A stretch of 64,000 nt of DNA from Magallana gigas (GCF_963853765.1 NC_088859.1:50220001-50284000); one strand, 5' to 3'. Shown: positions 22,613 to 32,537, counted from the stretch's first letter. Numbers and translations: made by a program. Notes: generated by a model not told the origin, from the letters alone.

Positions 22613-22809
22613 CTGTACTTATGTCAAAGGTCCCATACAAACTTAAAAGTATACTTAATCAATATCTTAGATTATTGAAGTTGAATTTAGGAACGTAGCA
22701 TCGGCCTGGGGGTAGGGGCATCTTCGCTAGCCAAAGGGTCCCCCCTCCCGCCAATGAGAAAAGAAAGAAAGAAGAAAGTTAACCTTAAAATAAATGTTTT
22801 GAGTTATCT

Positions 22810-22816
22810 GCTTACA

Positions 22817-22883
<67 letters not shown>
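22810..22883. repeat. (CT)n microsatellite; a second tract at 24378-24430
   Basis: Directly visible perfect CT tracts. Confidence 0.97.
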
Positions 22884-22885
<2 letters not shown>

Positions 22886-22899
22886 ACCTGAACCTGAAA

Positions 22900-24335
22900 A
22901 TGAATATCGATAAATCTAAAATAATAATACATTGTATTTAGCAAAGGTAGGCAGAAAGAAAACATACAGATAAAATATAACGATAAATTTATTGAAGTCG
23001 TTACTGATTTTAACTATTTTGGAATAGTATTTAGCAGAACAGGATCTTTTAAAATTGCAATACAGAAATTAGCCGAAAAAGCTACAAAAGCATTATATGA
23101 AGTACTAAAAAGGGGGAGATTTCATAACCTATCAGTACAATGTCAGCTACATTTTTTTGACAAAATTGTCCAACCTATACCTTTATATGGATGGGAAGTC
23201 TGGGGTTTTTCAAATATTGCAATTATAGAGAGAATTCATCTCAAATTTTGTAAACTTCTACTCCATTTAAAACAATCAACTCCAGATTTCATGATATATG
23301 GTGAACTTGCATGGTCGATACCCACTTAAAATTCAAATTAAAACACGCATTATTTTTTATTGGTCAAGAATACTTACCGGAAAAGATACAAAAATTGCAA
23401 AGTTAATATATGATCTAAGAATTTGCATGAACCACGAATTTGAGGGGAAATTCCTTGGTATGAAAACATCAAACATATTCTAAATAACTGCGGTTTATCT
23501 AATATATGGATTAATCAAACTATACATAACTCTCAATAGCCGCCGCGCGTAAAGGCAAAAATAAAACTCACGTTGATAGACCAAATCAAACAAAATTGGC
23601 AATCTATTCTGCAATCATCCCCAAAAGCTCTAAATTATAAGAATCCATTATCACCAGTTCCTGCATAATTTTCTCACCTTTATCTTCCACTTCGCTATTT
23701 CTCCGATTGTCCCGAATGATTTCTTGTGAACATCACACAGCCGACTTTAGGCATTTTGTCGGTGTGGATACTACCGAGAGATCTGAAAAAAGGACAGCTG
23801 GTACACATAGAATGCAGTTCATTATAGTTATATCTCCCTATTTATACGTCAGTTAAAAGATTGGATTAAAGTTTTTAATCGACCAATCAGCTTGAGGAAC
23901 GGGATATCATCTACATTTGAGCTGGTCACGGACGAGTTCCGATGATACGAAGCATACCTTGAACACGCCCACTCATGATACCATATATAGAATTTGTAAG
24001 GAAGAGTTAAAATTTGAACGTTATTTTGTTACATTATCAAAAAAACGTTCAATGACTTTTTGTAGATTTCGAACATGTAATCACCATTTACCCATTGAAA
24101 GTGGACGTTGGGCAAATATTCCTAGACATGAAAGATTCTGTGCTCATTGCAATAAGCGCGAAATAGGAGATGGATTTCACTACATACTTAGCTGTAACTC
24201 GTTGCAGCAAGAACGCAATCAATGCTTATCAAATACAAAAATAAAAAATGCTATTAGTTTTAAATTTATAGTGGGAAGTACAAAACATTGTTCTTTGAGG
24301 AAATTATGTGTGCTTTTATTAGAAAAATAAATAAA
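22900..24335 (+). mobile_element. 5'-truncated, decayed non-LTR retrotransposon ORF2 C-terminus (CR1/L2-like group), interrupted by a ~340-bp insert
   Basis: Peptides DFNYFGIVFSRTGSF, PLYGWEVWGF, ERIHLKFCKLLLHLKQSTPDFMIYGEL, RYPLKIQIKTRIIFYWSRIL, and CRFRTCNHHLPIESGRW...RFCAHCNKREIGDGFHYILSC, with frameshifts and stops. Confidence 0.85.
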
Positions 24336-24374
24336 AATGCTCCCCAGGTTAGAACCCCCATACAACGAGTCAGA

Positions 24375-24436
<62 letters not shown>

Positions 24437-24979
24437 GCATGCATTGTTAATTAGTAAGAAATACCACATATTGTATCATTATAATCAATTCAATTTCAAT
24501 TCAATTTATTATCCTTGAGCTTTACAACTCATCGGAATACAAATTATAATACATATATTATTATATACAAATGTGCAATGTGCAGTAAGTGAGTGGACAT
24601 ATTAAGACAATATAATCATGTACATATCTTAAAATATGAATGGACATAAATGTATGAAATCTCTGTGTACCATCGTGCAATGGTGTTGAGACTAAGATAA
24701 ATGAATTTAATTGAACTCCAGCTTATCAGGATTTAGGATTTTCTAGGGATTATAATCTTTTTTGTGGCGTTTACACATCATCAAAAGAAAATCAAACCGT
24801 TTCAGTGTCGTGTTCCCCGAACTCATTGTCCTGTGCATAATCAGCAATTAAAGTTGTAAATGTGCCTAATGGTTAGGTCTAACTTTGCAAAAAAGGAGGG
24901 GGAGGGGCTAAGCCCCCCGGTTTCGACACCTATGGACAGTTTCCCCATTTTATGCAACTTTTACAGCTCAGGGAAAATC

Positions 24980-28303: not shown

Positions 28304-28905
28304 CCCAGAGGAAGACATCTCCTTGGTAAGTTAACGCATGATTTTTGTCTTATTCTCTCAGTTGATCTGAGAGCATTATCAGTTACTCTCAGGCAATATA
28401 CATGCACTGTATCTATATTGCATGATAGTAACTGCAGTCTACAAAACTATTTCATATATCTTTGACTGAAGTTTAGTACATCTATAAAAGAAAAAGGTAA
28501 TTGTGTGTTTTGGGGTGAAGTTTTTTGAGCAAAATATTTGCAAAATAAATGCTGCTGAATCAAAATAAATGTCATTGTCTCCAATGATTTACAGGAAGAG
28601 AAGAGGGCCATGATGCCCAAATACAGGAGAGGTATGGGAAACATGAACCAGGGGCCAGGACGGCCACCAGCATCAAGTAAGTTTTATTGAATTTTTGTTA
28701 ATAGATTATGTCTTTACTACCAATCTAAGAAAATCAGTGTGTCCCTTACTGGTCATGTTACATATTTATGAAATACATGTCTTACTTTGTAGATATGATG
28801 GGAGGTATGGGCAATGGTAGTGGGGGATCCAATATGTATGGGAGTGGAATGTCATATCAGGGACAGAGCGGTTACAGACCACCAATGACAAGTCGACAGT
28901 ACTGA
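25100..28905 (+). CDS. ZNF207: BUB3-interacting GLEBS-motif zinc finger protein ZNF207/BuGZ, 9 coding exons, 370 aa
   Basis: Exons 25100-25140, 26609-26735, 26925-27060, 27264-27506, 27655-27673, 27780-27909, 28104-28325, 28595-28676 and 28793-28905 total 1113 nt. [60 protein letters not shown]...[10 protein letters not shown] and GLEBS motif [22 protein letters not shown] at 29136-29141. Confidence 0.97.
25141..26608 (+). other. U12-type GT-AG intron 1 of ZNF207
   Basis: 5' site GTATCCTTTT, branch site TTCCTTAAC at 26591-26599, AG at 26607-26608. The intron splits the Trp codon (TG|G). Confidence 0.95.
25254..25381. mobile_element. Palindromic MITE with 9-bp TSD; second copy at 33549-33665
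   Basis: CAGGGGCTCGTCACGAA...TTCGTGACGAGCCCCTG hairpin centred on AATAAAATACATGTATTTTATT, flanked by AGGTTGGGC at 25245-25253 and 25382-25390. Confidence 0.85.
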
Positions 28906-29497
28906 TAGCAGATGACAAGTGGAAAGTACTGACAGCAGAGCTGGAGGCTTATCAATTGTTTTACAAATGTGTTTCACTCAGCTAAGTCTGATTTTATGAT
29001 GTTGTGATAGTAGATGTACACCATCAAAAGATCAATCTCATTGAGTAAAATTCTAAGGTGGAATTTTATTGTGTTTTATGAGTGAAATGATTGTATTTTG
29101 TAGATGTAAATGATGTCCTTTTACTTATATTTAAAAATAAAGTTCTTGAGTATCAAGGTAAGAAACTAAAAGATCAATAGGCATTGTGTAGAAAACAGAT
29201 TTAAAAACTTGGTAAGTGTGATAAATACTTTCTTTTAAAAAAAAACATGTACTGCATTGAATGTTCATCATACAATTGTCATCTACATTTTTATACAAAT
29301 AAATGTGGCATATTATGTGTTACTCATTAGAATGTCATGATGTTTATGAGGGAAAAAGGCAAGTACAATTAGTTTTTGACAGCAATCTGCAAAATGACGA
29401 ATTTTTGGCAATGTTGAGAGAAACTGCTGTAAAGGTTGGTGTTATGAATTGTTATGGTTTGTTTGGAATTCTCAAGACACCTAATTAAAGGTGGGTG

Positions 29498-29563
29498 GTC
29501 ACAGCAGAATCTCTGGCATTTTGCTGTTGGGTTTAACACCCCCAACATGTATATGTTGGTGAC
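29498..29563 (+). other. Four-way-junction structured RNA motif, copy 1
   Basis: P1 GTCA/TGAC; P2 CAGCAGAAT/ATTTTGCTG; TT linker; P3 GGGT/ACCC; P4 CCAACAT/ATGTTGG. Confidence 0.7.
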
Positions 29564-29610
29564 AACAGAACAGAATGAATTAGATCCGCTGTGTTGAAGA
29601 AAGGCAAGTG

Positions 29611-29666
29611 GTCACAGCAAGTTGTCTTGCTGTTGGGTTTCACACCCCCAACTGTTTGTTGGTGAC
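29611..29666 (+). other. Four-way-junction structured RNA motif, copy 2
   Basis: P1 GTCA/TGAC; P2 CAGCAAG/CTTGCTG; TT; P3 GGGT/ACCC; P4 CCAAC/GTTGG. Confidence 0.7.
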
Positions 29667-29727
29667 AGCAGATTTTGTGGATTATGTTGGATTGTGTCGG
29701 TGAAATTTCTCATGAGAAGCTATTTCT

Positions 29728-29780
29728 GTCACAGCATAGTATGCTGTTGGGTTGAAGGCCCCCAACATTGTGTTGGTGAC
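29728..29780 (+). other. Four-way-junction structured RNA motif, copy 3
   Basis: P1 GTCA/TGAC (extends to CTGTCA/TGACAG); P2 CAGCAT/ATGCTG; TT; P3 GGGTT/GGCCC with two G-U pairs; P4 CCAACA/TGTTGG. Confidence 0.7.
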
Positions 29781-30089
29781 AGTTTATTTAACTGAATTGC
29801 ATGGCAGAAAATAAGCTTGATGATAAATATGTGTTTTTATTTCTAGTTCAAACAAACAGAATCACCACACTGTAAGTAACAGATAGATAGGGAGAAACTT
29901 TTAATTAAACATTTCTGAATAATTCTTTGGATTAAGATATAACATTATTATAAATGTGGAGAGATTGCTAGTAGATGTGATGATAGTTGAGGGAGGTCTG
30001 ACGTGTGGTTTGTTTTTCTCTGGTACAGGGCCGGGGTCTGGTACACTGGACAGGGGTAGACGACTCTATCCTGACTGGTATGTACTCAG

Positions 30090-30149
30090 GTCACAGTGGG
30101 CACTGCTCACTGTTGGGCCGAAGTCTGGCCCCCAACTCGTGTTGGCGAC
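30090..30149 (+). other. Four-way-junction structured RNA motif, copy 4 (diverged, with compensatory changes)
   Basis: P1 GTCA/CGAC (one mismatch); P2 CAGTGGGC/GCTCACTG; TT; P3 GGGCC/GGCCC; P4 CCAAC/GTTGG. Confidence 0.7.
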
Positions 30150-30754
30150 ATTATCATTTTGTGTAATCACAATGCTTGAAATAAGTAAAGATTTGAATAT
30201 TTAAAGAGAGTGAATGATAAATGATATATCTGACTTTGAAAGAATTGGGTTTTTTGAAATGTTAAATTAAACTGTGAGGGTAGTATGATTTATCATAATC
30301 TTAATATACTAAATAAAAGGTTTGTTGCGATAAAACCATGTAACAGATGTACATTTAGTATGTATGTGACTTTCTACATTGAAAACTGTGAGGCAGCATC
30401 TCAGCAAGTGGATGTTTGACATTAGTTTTGACTGCTGTGTGACTTTTCAGAGCTTAACAGCATTATTACCAGATTGGTAAAAAAAACTCCATGAAAGATG
30501 AAACCAGAAAACGTTAAGTTGTAATGTCACAGGGGGTATACGAGATGCCTAACCTAATGTCTGTTTCATGAAATGGTCCTACGGCAGCAAGAAACTGAAA
30601 GCTTTGTACTGACTTGTCACTAAGCGAGTGACGGCGCTGACTGAATACTCGGTTTTGTTGATTGTCTTGCATTGAATGTATGTGTAGCTAAGAAGTATTT
30701 TATGTTGGAATTGTCAATAAAGATGAATTGATAAAGAATCTAGCACATTCTTAT

Positions 30755-32537
30755 TTTTAAAGTCACCTGATTCACTCAGGTGACCTATTGCAATTGGGTC
30801 TTCGTTCGTCGTCGTGCGATGTGCGTCGTCCTTCGTGCGTAAACATTTTTGCATTTTCAACTTCTTGAATAGTACGAGGCAAATTGTTACGTTTTTTAGT
30901 GTAAACTTTTGAAATTCATGGCCTAGGCCCTGGGTCAGGGGTTCAGACCCTATGGTGGGGCCAGTTTGGCTAAAAAATATTAAATCTTATAAAATCTTAC
31001 TCTTTACTCCCAAATCCATTTGAGAAAAACTACAAGCATAGTTTCCATGAAGCCATCTACGCAAATTGCGAAATTCATGACCCTTGGGACGGGGGATCAG
31101 GCCCTAGGATGGGACCAACATAGCCATGTAGTTAAAATGTAATAAGGTGTCACTATATTTGCACAACTTTAGTTACCTACTATAAATTCAAAAAGAACTT
31201 TTGGAAATCATCTTATATTAAACAATGCTTCATTAACAATTTAAAATTAGCAAAAAACACATGTGCATCCAGCAAGACACGAAATTTTATTTACGTCGAA
31301 GAAAGCATAGCACTTTTGTTTACAACGAAGTTATATGTGCTTGAAAATCAAACCCGAGCCTTTTCACCCCCTTGGAAACAACAGGCATTAAAAATTCAAA
31401 TGACACCGCATTATTAAAAAAAAAACAAAATGGTATAGTCAGACATCTTACACATATTGTTTAATCTCATAAAAATCAGATCCTGTCGTGGGCCTAAACG
31501 CCCAAAATTCAAAGGGAAATTCGCGAATTATTTTGTTTCAGTCATGTTTTTACCTGACTGTAAAATAAAATTATGAAACCTTAAATCCTAGAAAATATAT
31601 TTGTGAAAATTAAATGCATGGTTACAATGTCCACGAATTCATCTAGCTAAATTCTGAAATTCATGGCCCCTGGGTCAGGGGTTCAGGCCCTAGGTCGGGG
31701 CGAATATAGTAAAATGAATTAAATCTTAGAAAATCTCTACTCCCATATCTGAGAAAAAACTAAATGCATTATTCTGATGTCCAAGAAATTCTCAACCAAA
31801 ATTTTGATATTCATGGTCCCCCTGTGAAAGGGGTTTAGGCCATAAAGTGGGGTCAATATGGCCTTATAATGAAAATTATTAAATTGAAAAAAAAATCTTC
31901 CCTTCTATTTATATTTATTAAGAAAAAATTAATGCATGTTTGAAAAGCATGCTCTGTTATTATATTCCTAATGTCATGATGTTAAATTGGGGCATGCAGA
32001 AGTTGAGGCTTTTTCTTTGTGGGTGGGGGGGGGGGGGGGTGATAAATATGAACATTTATTGAACATGGATTATAATTTGAGGTAATTGATACGTGTCATC
32101 CATTAACAATTTTAACTTCATCTTGATAACTACATGGTAAATGTCACTTGGCAATACTGAATTAAATATATTTAGTATCCTGCATGAGCATTGTATACCT
32201 GAAGAAATGAGCTGTAAGATTTTGATTTGTATCGTACATGAAATTTCGAATATTATAAAAGATCGAATTATTACCAAAAGTTTACAATTTTTGGCCCCTG
32301 GAGCTAAGGTAAAGATAATCCGAGATTCTCCGTCTCTCAAACCCCATTCTCCCCAACCCCCATTTCCATGATTTTATTTTCAAACAACAAATAATAATAG
32401 CGACTAAACAGCAAGAGGTGCCTAATATTTGAGTTTTTACATCAAAATGAAGCTTAATTAAAAGGCAAACATGAGACACTCTGATATGTCAATCGAAGGG
32501 CAATCGGGTGACCGTCAAGGCCTGTAGGCCTCTTGTT
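30755..32537 (-). mobile_element. Decayed HINE-like element with degenerate internal monomers
   Basis: Left end palindrome GTCACCTGATTCACTCAGGTGAC followed by a (CGT)n-like microsatellite. Repeated GAAATTCATGGCCC...GGGTCAGGGGTTCAG units. Right end GGCCTGTAGGCCTCTTGTT is the reverse complement of an AACAAGAGGCC start. Confidence 0.65.

What the first reader, a model, noticed from the sequence alone, without database searches (positions are those of the whole stretch)
29491..30149. Four copies of a covarying four-way-junction RNA motif placed just after 5' splice sites downstream of ZNF207
Seen in sequence: four 53-66 nt elements share the consensus GTCA-CAGYR-loop-YRCTG-TT-GGGY-loop-RCCC-CCAAC-loop-GTTGG-YGAC. 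This folds by eye into a four-way junction with 0/2/0/0-nt linkers. Loops and inter-copy spacers are unrelated, while stems are kept. Copy 4 shows compensatory double changes (CAGCA/TGCTG to CAGTG/CACTG; GGGT/ACCC to GGGCC/GGCCC), and G-U pairs mostly favour the + strand. Copies 1 and 2 both start at position +8 after donor-like sites (AAG|GTGGGT at 29491; AAG|GCAAGT, a GC-type donor, at 29604). Copy 4 starts at +13 after G|GTATGT (30078). Copy 3 has no canonical donor at that offset. An alternative GTTGGG/CCCAAC pairing is possible in all copies, so the fold could be bistable. It matches no RNA family I recognise. Inference: a structured splicing-regulatory element that modulates U1 use of weak donors, possibly a ZNF207 autoregulation sensor, or a set of intron-encoded small RNAs.
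Basis: partly seen in the sequence, partly recalled or inferred. Interest (0 to 1): 0.9.

Follow-up and report, generated by a model that had tools for sequence, protein, structure and literature searches.

The report
Conserved clover RNA in ZNF207 3'UTR
The four elements are real copies of an ancient four-way-junction RNA found only in the 3' untranslated region of the ZNF207 gene. Most copies across animal phyla sit just after a splice-donor-like U1-binding motif, which suggests that this U1 snRNP helper protein regulates its own mRNA.

Summary
Four 53-66 nt elements (29498-29563, 29611-29666, 29728-29780, 30090-30149, + strand) share the stated consensus and fold as a four-way junction. They are the only copies in the 564-Mb oyster genome.

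Stranded poly(A) RNA-seq places them in the ZNF207 terminal exon, 593-1244 nt after the stop codon. They are read continuously on the + strand, and no splice joint was seen at the proposed donors.

A covariance model finds 3-6 copies downstream of ZNF207 in an ark clam, a limpet, a nemertean and 49 metagenome contigs. Every locus with enough upstream DNA has a ZNF207 exon upstream on the same strand. Across 78 copies, 96-99% of cells pair and 10 of 18 pairs show compensatory changes.

The exact 8-mer AGGCAAGU sits 6-24 nt upstream of 39 of 64 non-redundant copies. This is the consensus of GC-type splice donors and complements U1 except at +2. It is never AGGUAAGU.

The fold almost certainly belongs to the "clover-shaped" ZNF207 folds that EvoFold predicted in vertebrates in 2006. 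Their function is unknown. ZNF207 was shown in 2025 to be a U1 snRNP auxiliary factor.

Best reading: a U1-linked autoregulatory module. This is inferred, not shown.

The parts
28793..28905 (+). Last coding part of the ZNF207 terminal exon, with stop codon TGA at 28903-28905
   Evidence: Splice joints 28324>28594 and 28674/6>28793 in RNA-seq. Reading frame and stop. ZNF207 identity from the exon matches.
28906..30740 (+). ZNF207 3'UTR. AAUAAA signals lie at 29136 (proximal) and 30716 (probable distal end). The 3' limit is approximate.
   Evidence: Continuous coverage with first mate on the minus strand only, which means + strand RNA. Contig X10 record 3 spans 28594-28674 plus 28793-30507. Poly(A) signals.
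29488..29497 (+). Donor-like box of copy 1, AAG|GUGGGUG (GU-type variant, +1 at 29491)
   Evidence: Sequence. It shares the AAAGG...GUG flank with copy 2 (family D3) and matches 6 of 9 positions of CAGGUAAGU.
29498..29563 (+). Clover copy 1 (four-way junction)
   Evidence: R1 72.8 bits, R2 60.1 bits. The MFE fold is the junction. The population SNP 29537 C>G falls in the P3 loop.
29601..29610 (+). Donor-like box of copy 2, AAG|GCAAGUG (+1 at 29604). This is the exact conserved GC-type box.
   Evidence: Sequence. It is identical to the 8-mer found upstream of 39 of 64 copies in other species.
29611..29666 (+). Clover copy 2
   Evidence: R1 79 bits, R2 67.4 bits. The MFE fold is the junction.
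29728..29780 (+). Clover copy 3 (no donor-like box; P1 can extend to 6 bp)
   Evidence: R1 75.9 bits, R2 64 bits. The MFE prefers the alternative GUUGGG/CCCAAC fold by 1.6 kcal/mol.
30076..30083 (+). Donor-like box of copy 4, UG|GUAUGU (+1 at 30078, 12 nt before P1)
   Evidence: Sequence. It matches 7 of 9 positions of CAGGUAAGU.
30090..30149 (+). Clover copy 4 (three compensatory pair changes; A.C next to the junction)
   Evidence: R1 70.3 bits, R2 59.3 bits. The MFE fold is the junction. Pair table.

Best explanation
Shown:
- The four elements are transcribed parts of the 3'UTR of the oyster ZNF207 (BuGZ) mRNA.
- Each is a copy of an ancient RNA module found only in this gene. The module is a compact four-way junction ('clover') with helices P1 GUC/GAC, P2 ACAGN/NCUGU, P3 GGGY/RCCC and P4 CCAAC/GUUGG. 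The loops are free to vary.
- In most copies across phyla the clover is preceded, 6-24 nt upstream, by MAG|GCAAGU. This is the consensus of GC-type 5' splice sites. It is complementary to the 5' end of U1 snRNA except at +2.

Inferred:
- The module is a cis-acting sensor through which ZNF207 controls its own mRNA. ZNF207 is a U1 snRNP auxiliary factor whose zinc fingers bind U1 snRNA and U1-70K.
- U1 snRNP pairs with the deliberately weakened donor-like box.
- The adjacent clover acts as a docking platform for ZNF207 or a U1 component, so that U1 occupancy depends on ZNF207 level.
- U1 parked in a terminal exon then lowers mRNA output. The route would be U1-70K-dependent nuclear retention and decay, or inhibition of polyadenylation. 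Rare 3'UTR splicing leading to NMD is also possible.
- Several copies per UTR would make the response cooperative.
For: Position and strand:
- RNA-seq shows continuous + strand coverage from the last coding exon through all copies.

Gene specificity:
- Only 4 hits exist in the 564-Mb genome, by pattern and by two covariance models.
- The same pattern gives 2 chance hits in 596 Gb of prokaryotic genomes and 0 in viral contigs.

Orthology:
- There are 3-6 copies on the gene strand downstream of ZNF207 in Tegillarca (L015), Lottia (L020), Lineus (L021) and unnamed contigs L018, L019 and L022.
- 49 of 52 metagenome loci found by the pattern are true elements.
- In all 22 loci with enough upstream DNA, the ZNF207 GLEBS exon lies upstream on the same strand.
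- Two spliced cDNA-like contigs carry the element 113-1200 nt after the stop codon.

Structure:
- Across 78 copies, 96.1% of cells pair (98.9% with the refined junction).
- 10 of 18 pairs show double changes, in 57 cells. No shuffle out of 500 reaches this, and slid controls pair only 23-68%.
- RNAalifold on an independent MAFFT alignment gives the same fold.
- 52 of 64 copies fold this way on their own.

Donor-like box:
- Exact AGGCAAGU stands upstream of 39 of 64 copies, with modal offset +7/+8, and is never AGGUAAGU.
- GGCAAGU elsewhere in these loci occurs at the chance rate (33 seen, 29 expected).
- 66% of copies have at least 7 of 9 matches to CAGGUAAGU within 30 nt upstream, against 5.7% of random windows.
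- The oyster U1 5' end is AUACUUACCUG.
- The box has no consistent predicted pairing partner in cis, which fits recognition in trans.

Literature:
- ZNF207 binds U1 snRNA and U1-70K and promotes use of weak donors (PMC12952242).
- Intact 5'SS motifs in mature mRNAs cause U1-70K/ZFC3H1-dependent nuclear retention and decay (PMC9074902).
- Human ZNF207 has NMD-sensitive isoforms, as do the U1-related genes SNRNP70 and LUC7L (bioRxiv 10.1101/2025.03.12.642709).
Against: - No experiment or dataset here shows that ZNF207 or U1 binds the module, or that the module changes expression.
- The clover shows no sequence resemblance to the U1 four-helix junction beyond topology.
- One third of copies, including oyster c3, lack a recognisable box.
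- The predicted unpaired probability of the box is not high (0.31, against 0.40 for the whole segment).
- The box could be a protein site rather than a U1 site.
- Homology to the vertebrate EvoFold folds could not be checked at sequence level with these tools.
Confidence: 0.55

Rival explanations
1. The boxes are genuine, regulated GC-type 5' splice sites, and the clover is the first structure of a 3'UTR intron. ZNF207-stimulated use of these weak donors removes part of the UTR. That places an exon junction more than 55 nt after the stop codon, so the product is destroyed by NMD (autoregulatory splicing coupled to NMD).
For: - The box matches the full GC-AG donor consensus, including position -3 (A or C).
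- P1 begins just where the U1:5'ss duplex would end (+7/+8).
- Human ZNF207 has NMD-sensitive isoforms (bioRxiv 10.1101/2025.03.12.642709).
- Strong 3'ss-like tracts occur in the oyster UTR near 29846 and 30028.
- NMD would hide the spliced product from steady-state RNA-seq.
Against: - Two poly(A) RNA-seq runs at depth 2-22 show no joint starting at 29491, 29604 or 30078.
- One transcript contig runs unspliced through all four copies.
- cDNA-like contigs of other species also keep the modules unspliced.
- No conserved acceptor was identified.
Confidence: 0.2
2. The clover is a binding platform for some other trans-acting factor that controls localisation, stability or translation of ZNF207 mRNA (for example a spindle- or cell-cycle-linked factor). 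The upstream box is a separate protein-binding site that only resembles a splice donor.
For: - The junction core is conserved in sequence, not just in pairing, as expected for specific recognition.
- It sits in a 3'UTR and occurs in multiple copies.
- One third of copies lack the box.
Against: - An exact 8-mer identical to the GC-donor consensus, with the 5'ss preference at position -3, is hard to explain without U1.
- The gene's own product works with U1 snRNP (PMC12952242).
- A general regulator would be expected to have other targets, yet the element occurs in no other gene.
Confidence: 0.15
3. The clovers are excised from the UTR as small stable RNAs, in the manner of tRNA-like mascRNA from MALAT1.
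For: The shape is cloverleaf-like, the size is 53-66 nt, and there are several copies per transcript.
Against: - No tRNA-like features are present. ARAGORN and the Rfam tRNA model do not hit the copies.
- The closing stem is 3-4 bp and there is no conserved T-loop or D-loop.
- Coverage across the copies is continuous, with no pile-up of read ends (table 6).
Confidence: 0.04
4. This is a functionless local tandem repeat, a transposon fragment, or DNA-level palindromes kept by template switching.
For: Copies c1 and c2 share flanks and a period of about 110 nt, so local duplication did occur.
Against: - There are only four copies in the genome.
- The element is conserved at the orthologous site in molluscs and a nemertean, and probably in annelids. 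The stems are kept while the loops are scrambled.
- Compensatory changes occur in all four helices.
- The strand asymmetry is 59-67 bits on + against 12-13 bits on -.
Confidence: 0.01

Closest known systems
EvoFold 'new clover-shaped folds' at the 3' end of vertebrate ZNF207 (Pedersen et al. 2006, PMC1440920)
   Same: - Same gene and same region (3'UTR and 3'-terminal part).
- Same shape (clover, i.e. four-way junction).
- More than one copy per gene.
- Central stems are nearly identical between copies, with a few compensatory changes, while the loops differ by substitutions and indels.
- Function is unknown.
   Different: [quoted passage not shown]
- Here there are 3-6 copies, all in the terminal exon, in molluscs, a nemertean and probably annelids.
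- The paper as held does not mention the upstream GC-type donor-like box.
- Sequence-level identity with the vertebrate folds could not be tested here.
U1A autoregulation through the polyadenylation inhibition element (PIE) in its own 3'UTR (established knowledge, from memory)
   Same: - A U1 snRNP-associated protein whose own 3'UTR carries repeated structured RNA sites.
- The effect is exerted in the terminal exon.
- The logic is negative feedback.
   Different: - PIE mimics the U1 stem-loop II loop sequence and binds U1A directly.
- The clover has no conserved loops, no detectable U1 mimicry at sequence level, and an added U1-complementary box.
- Binding has not been shown.
Nuclear retention and decay of mature mRNAs that carry an intact 5' splice-site motif, via U1-70K and ZFC3H1 (PMC9074902); U1-dependent inhibition of polyadenylation (from memory)
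   Same: An unspliced U1-complementary motif in a terminal exon or 3'UTR of a polyadenylated mRNA.
   Different: - Those motifs are usually accidents of misprocessing.
- Here the motif is conserved across phyla, is always weakened at one position, and is coupled to a structured RNA.
Cluster of alternative 5' splice sites in SNRNP70 that links U1C and U1-70K levels, and poison exons of splicing factors (from memory; SNRNP70 and LUC7L are mentioned in bioRxiv 10.1101/2025.03.12.642709)
   Same: Homeostatic control of a U1 snRNP-related gene through several weak donors in its own transcript.
   Different: - Those act by demonstrated splicing coupled to NMD inside the gene body.
- No splicing is seen here, and no four-way junction is involved there.

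Membership tests
EvoFold ZNF207 clover-shaped fold family | Lies in the 3'UTR or 3'-terminal transcript region of ZNF207 | tested here: met
   RNA-seq places all four copies in the terminal exon after the stop codon. The ZNF207 exon is upstream on the same strand in 22 of 22 informative loci.
EvoFold ZNF207 clover-shaped fold family | Clover (four-helix) secondary structure supported by compensatory substitutions | tested here: met
   96-99% of cells pair, 10 of 18 pairs show double changes, and no shuffle out of 500 reaches this.
EvoFold ZNF207 clover-shaped fold family | Several copies per gene with near-identical central stems and divergent loops | tested here: met
   Alignments.
EvoFold ZNF207 clover-shaped fold family | Sequence homology to the vertebrate folds | not testable with these tools
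   No vertebrate DNA was reachable. The paper's figure and supplements are not held.
tRNA or tRNA-like (mascRNA-type) element | Recognised by tRNA models; 7-bp acceptor stem; conserved D and T loops | tested here: not met
   ARAGORN finds no tRNA at the copies. There is no Rfam tRNA hit even at E<=10. The closing stem is 3-4 bp and the loops are unconserved.
Self-cleaving ribozymes with multi-way junctions (twister-sister, hairpin, hammerhead) and any other Rfam family | Match to the family covariance model; conserved unpaired catalytic nucleotides | tested here: not met
   There is no Rfam 15 match above noise. No internal loops are present. Apart from one or two junction linker nucleotides, the only invariant nucleotides are in the helices.
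Transposon or dispersed repeat | Many dispersed genomic copies | tested here: not met
   There are four copies in 564 Mb, all at this locus.
Functional GC-AG 5' splice site | Sequence consensus MAG|GCAAGU | tested here: met
   Copy 2 matches exactly, as do 39 of 64 copies elsewhere. Position -3 is A or C.
Functional GC-AG 5' splice site | Observed exon-exon junctions starting at the site | tested here: not met
   No joints at 29491, 29604 or 30078 in two poly(A) runs and two contig sets. The depth of 2-22 cannot exclude rare or NMD-degraded products.
U1A-PIE-like autoregulatory element | Direct binding of the gene's own protein, and mimicry of its snRNA site | not testable with these tools
   No RNA-protein tool was available. 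By eye the clover core does not resemble the oyster U1 junction sequence.

The most novel reading that the evidence does not exclude
The clover is a specific, high-affinity RNA ligand for the ZNF207 zinc-finger domain (or for U1-70K). With the deliberately crippled GC donor in front of it, it forms a sensor at least as old as the Spiralia, and bilaterian-wide if the vertebrate folds are the same family. The sensor would measure free ZNF207 or U1 snRNP and set ZNF207 dosage. That would make it the first structured RNA known to recruit U1 snRNP to a pseudo-splice site for autoregulation. It would also explain the EvoFold ZNF207 folds, unexplained since 2006.
Probability: 0.3. Interest if true: 0.85.

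Novelty: new member of a known kind. Interest (0 to 1): 0.72.

Why it matters
Three facts that were unconnected now fit together:
- A top-ranked but never explained structured-RNA prediction in vertebrate ZNF207 (2006).
- The recent finding that ZNF207 is a U1 snRNP auxiliary factor (2025).
- A conserved U1-complementary GC-donor box directly in front of the structure, found here.

The module occurs in molluscs and a nemertean, and probably in annelids. It seems to occur in no other gene.

This gives a concrete and cheap hypothesis to test: autoregulation of a U1 cofactor through a structured pseudo-5' splice site. It also gives a covariance model (R2) for finding the element in any animal genome.

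If the hypothesis holds, it adds a new type of cis element to the known autoregulatory circuits of the splicing machinery. ZNF207 dosage matters for mitosis, pluripotency and progerin splicing.

Tried and rejected
- Rfam 15, at gathering thresholds on the whole window and at E<=10 on the region: nothing relevant.
- tRNA scan: only an unrelated tRNA at 3386.
- Weak genome hits of R1 at 21-29 bits on C2, C7 and C9: inspected and judged chance or an unrelated tandem array.
- U1 mimicry: the oyster U1 was fetched and folded. Apart from a four-helix junction with a 4-bp closing helix, there is no convincing sequence similarity.
- Sequestration of the box by a conserved helix: predicted partners are inconsistent (upstream, clover or downstream), so there is no conserved switch helix.
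- Bistable fold: it is thermodynamically possible in c1-c3, but the compensatory changes in P3 and P4 support the junction.
- L017 (another ZNF207 locus) showed no element. Its terminal exon probably lies beyond the fetched 8 kb, so this is uninformative.
- Three metagenome pattern hits (L030, L035, L047) and two prokaryotic hits (L078, L079) are GC-rich chance matches. The three metagenome hits were checked and lack P1 and P2.
- Vertebrate sequence comparison was not possible.
- Earlier-findings look-ups returned nothing.

Full report
**What is in the sequence.** The region holds four elements on the + strand: c1 29498-29563, c2 29611-29666, c3 29728-29780 and c4 30090-30149. All share GUCA-CAGYR...YRCUG-UU-GGGY...RCCC-CCAAC...GUUGG-YGAC. 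A strict pattern for the 3' two thirds hits four times in the window and never in 100 shuffles. It hits four times in the whole 564-Mb assembly, all of them here. ViennaRNA gives the four-way junction as the minimum-energy fold for three of the four copies. Rfam 15 has no matching family even at E<=10. ARAGORN sees no tRNA there.

**Where it lies.** ZNF207 exons run on the + strand up to a TGA at 28903-28905. Public runs labelled as oyster hold the stretch. Two stranded poly(A) RNA-seq runs give reads with the first mate only on the minus strand, which means + strand RNA. Coverage is continuous from 28793 to about 30680, at a depth similar to the coding exons. The only splice joints are 28324>28594 and 28674/6>28793. 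One 1797-nt transcript contig joins exon 28594-28674 to an uninterrupted 28793-30507. The elements are therefore in the terminal exon, 593-1244 nt into a 3'UTR of about 1.8 kb (AAUAAA at 29136 and 30716). No joint begins at 29491, 29604 or 30078. The only population variant inside a clover (29537 C>G) falls in a loop.

**Conservation.** A covariance model of the four copies (R1) finds nothing else convincing in the genome. I used a lineage-specific ZNF207 exon to collect relatives' proteins, then fetched their loci. R1 finds copies as follows, all on the gene strand and 0.8-4.5 kb past the last coding exon:
- five copies downstream of ZNF207 in the ark clam Tegillarca granosa (L015; species)
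- five in the limpet Lottia gigantea (L020)
- three in the nemertean Lineus longissimus (L021)
- three to five in three unnamed assemblies (L018, L019, L022)

A pattern scan of JGI metagenome contigs gave 52 loci. Of these, 49 are true elements by the model and three are GC-rich chance hits. As controls, the same pattern occurs twice in 596 Gb of prokaryotic genomes and never in viral contigs. In every one of the 22 loci with enough upstream sequence, the ZNF207 GLEBS exon (KLxHPDxDISL) lies upstream on the same strand. Two contigs are spliced cDNA-like, with the element 113-1200 nt after the stop codon. The ZNF207 of one of them is closest to annelid proteins. A model built from 78 copies (R2) again finds only the four oyster copies in the genome, at 59-67 bits. 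The next hit scores 21 bits, and the minus strand of the same sites scores 12-13 bits.

**Structure.** On the 78-copy alignment, 96.1% of cells form standard pairs. Ten of 18 pairs show changes on both sides, in 57 cells. All four helices are supported, no shuffle out of 500 reaches the observed values, and slid controls pair only 23-68%. The alignment is fitted to the model, so I also ran RNAalifold on an independent MAFFT alignment of 28 diverse copies. It returns the same four helices. Folded alone, 52 of 64 non-redundant copies adopt at least 80% of the consensus pairs.

One refinement follows from these data. The A after GUC pairs with the first U of the 'UU linker' in 74 of 77 cells, but with the 3' Y in only 35 of 77. 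The junction is therefore better described as P1 GUC/GAC (often extended outward to 6 bp, with G-C/A-U covariation), P2 ACAGN/NCUGU, one U, P3, P4, one Y. That description gives 98.9% pairing. The alternative GUUGGG/CCCAAC hairpin is energetically close in c1-c3, but the compensatory changes in P3 and P4 favour the junction. The loops carry no conserved nucleotides. The conserved part is the junction core.

**The upstream box.** I aligned the 30 nt upstream of all copies.
- The exact 8-mer AGGCAAGU precedes 39 of 64 non-redundant copies.
- Its +1 G lies 6-24 nt (mode 7-8) before P1.
- Position -3 is A or C, as in real donors.
- It is never AGGUAAGU.
- Elsewhere in the same loci GGCAAGU occurs at the chance rate (33 seen, 29 expected).

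At least 7 of 9 matches to CAGGUAAGU occur upstream of 66% of copies, against 5.7% of random windows. Other copies carry differently weakened donors, such as CU|GUAAGU in Lineus and CAA|GUGAGU in Lottia. In the oyster these are AAG|GUGGGU (c1) and UG|GUAUGU (c4). AG|GCAAGU is the consensus of GC-AG introns (established knowledge). It pairs with the oyster U1 5' end AUACUUACCUG at every position except +2. The box has no consistent predicted partner in cis.

**What is known.** Pedersen et al. 2006 (EvoFold, PMC1440920) reported 'new clover-shaped folds'. These were the first- and fourth-ranked long clover folds in the human genome. [quoted passage not shown] Their central stems are almost identical and their loops are divergent. 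The authors proposed them as a new family of unknown function. I found no follow-up in the searchable library.

The same gene, position, shape and conservation pattern make homology very likely. I put it at about 0.85, but I could not compare sequences.

Behera et al. 2025 (PMC12952242) showed that ZNF207 is a U1 snRNP auxiliary factor. Its zinc fingers bind U1 snRNA, and it binds U1-70K directly. Intact 5'SS motifs in mature mRNAs cause U1-70K/ZFC3H1-dependent nuclear retention and decay (PMC9074902). Human ZNF207 has NMD-sensitive isoforms, as do SNRNP70 and LUC7L.

**Interpretation.** Shown: this is a transcribed, + strand, gene-specific structured RNA module in the ZNF207 3'UTR. It is conserved across phyla and is coupled to a conserved U1-complementary GC-donor box. 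Inferred: the module lets ZNF207 regulate its own mRNA through U1 snRNP. Absolute selection for C at +2, or for another single defect, argues for a site that must stay weak and conditional. A consensus GU donor would be spliced constitutively or bound too strongly.

The data cannot yet distinguish two outcomes. One is U1 parked in the terminal exon, giving retention and decay or poly(A) inhibition. I favour this because the modules persist unspliced in mature transcripts of several species. A U1-independent factor remains possible. Small-RNA and junk-repeat readings are very unlikely.

**Verdict.** The fold family was already predicted in vertebrates. New here are its multi-copy presence in spiralian phyla, its strict restriction to ZNF207, the conserved GC-donor box, and the resulting testable mechanism.

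Noticed in passing
window 3386-3459 (+): A tRNA gene (Rfam tRNA 40.5 bits). ARAGORN reports it as tRNA-??? with a four-base anticodon 'agag', meaning an unusual anticodon loop.
   Followed up: no
window 30762-30797 and 31647-31687: Two short segments just beyond the ZNF207 3'UTR have RNA-seq/contig depth in the thousands, and many reads run on into unrelated sequence. They are high-copy repeat (MITE/TE-like) fragments. The first contains a palindrome, AGTCACCTGA..TCAGGTGACCT.
   Followed up: partly
L010 = G000:C7:51892288-51895353, about 860-1570 (-): A tandem array with a period of about 105-130 nt, built on the motif GTGTTGGTTACA. It gives a series of weak R1 hits (10-27 bits) 1.6 Mb from the window. 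It is probably an unrelated satellite.
   Followed up: partly
G000:C4:18980351-19062404: At least 30 U1 snRNA genes lie in a head-to-tail array with a period of about 2.1 kb. Smaller clusters lie on C7 near 9.05 Mb.
   Followed up: no
window 28675: All spliced reads carry G where the assembly has A, two bases before the exon end (exon ...CATCAA|GTAAGT). The reads tool therefore reported the intron as 'AA..AG' with two extra letters. The true intron is 28677-28792, GT..AG.
   Followed up: yes
window 29136-29141 and coverage 29200-29340: A proximal AAUAAA is followed by a roughly two-fold drop in coverage. This suggests alternative polyadenylation giving a short 3'UTR isoform that lacks all four modules.
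   Followed up: partly
window 22750-22965 and 24219-24518: Long (GA)n/(CT)n microsatellites lie upstream of ZNF207. Between them is an ORF (23917-24330) with a Cys/His-rich tail, which may be a retroelement remnant.
   Followed up: no
L019, L033, L026, L056, L060 (other species): Copies within one species resemble each other more than copies between species. For example, all L019 and L033 copies have P1 extended as GCAUCA/UGAUGC. This indicates turnover or gene conversion within the arrays while the junction core stays fixed.
   Followed up: partly
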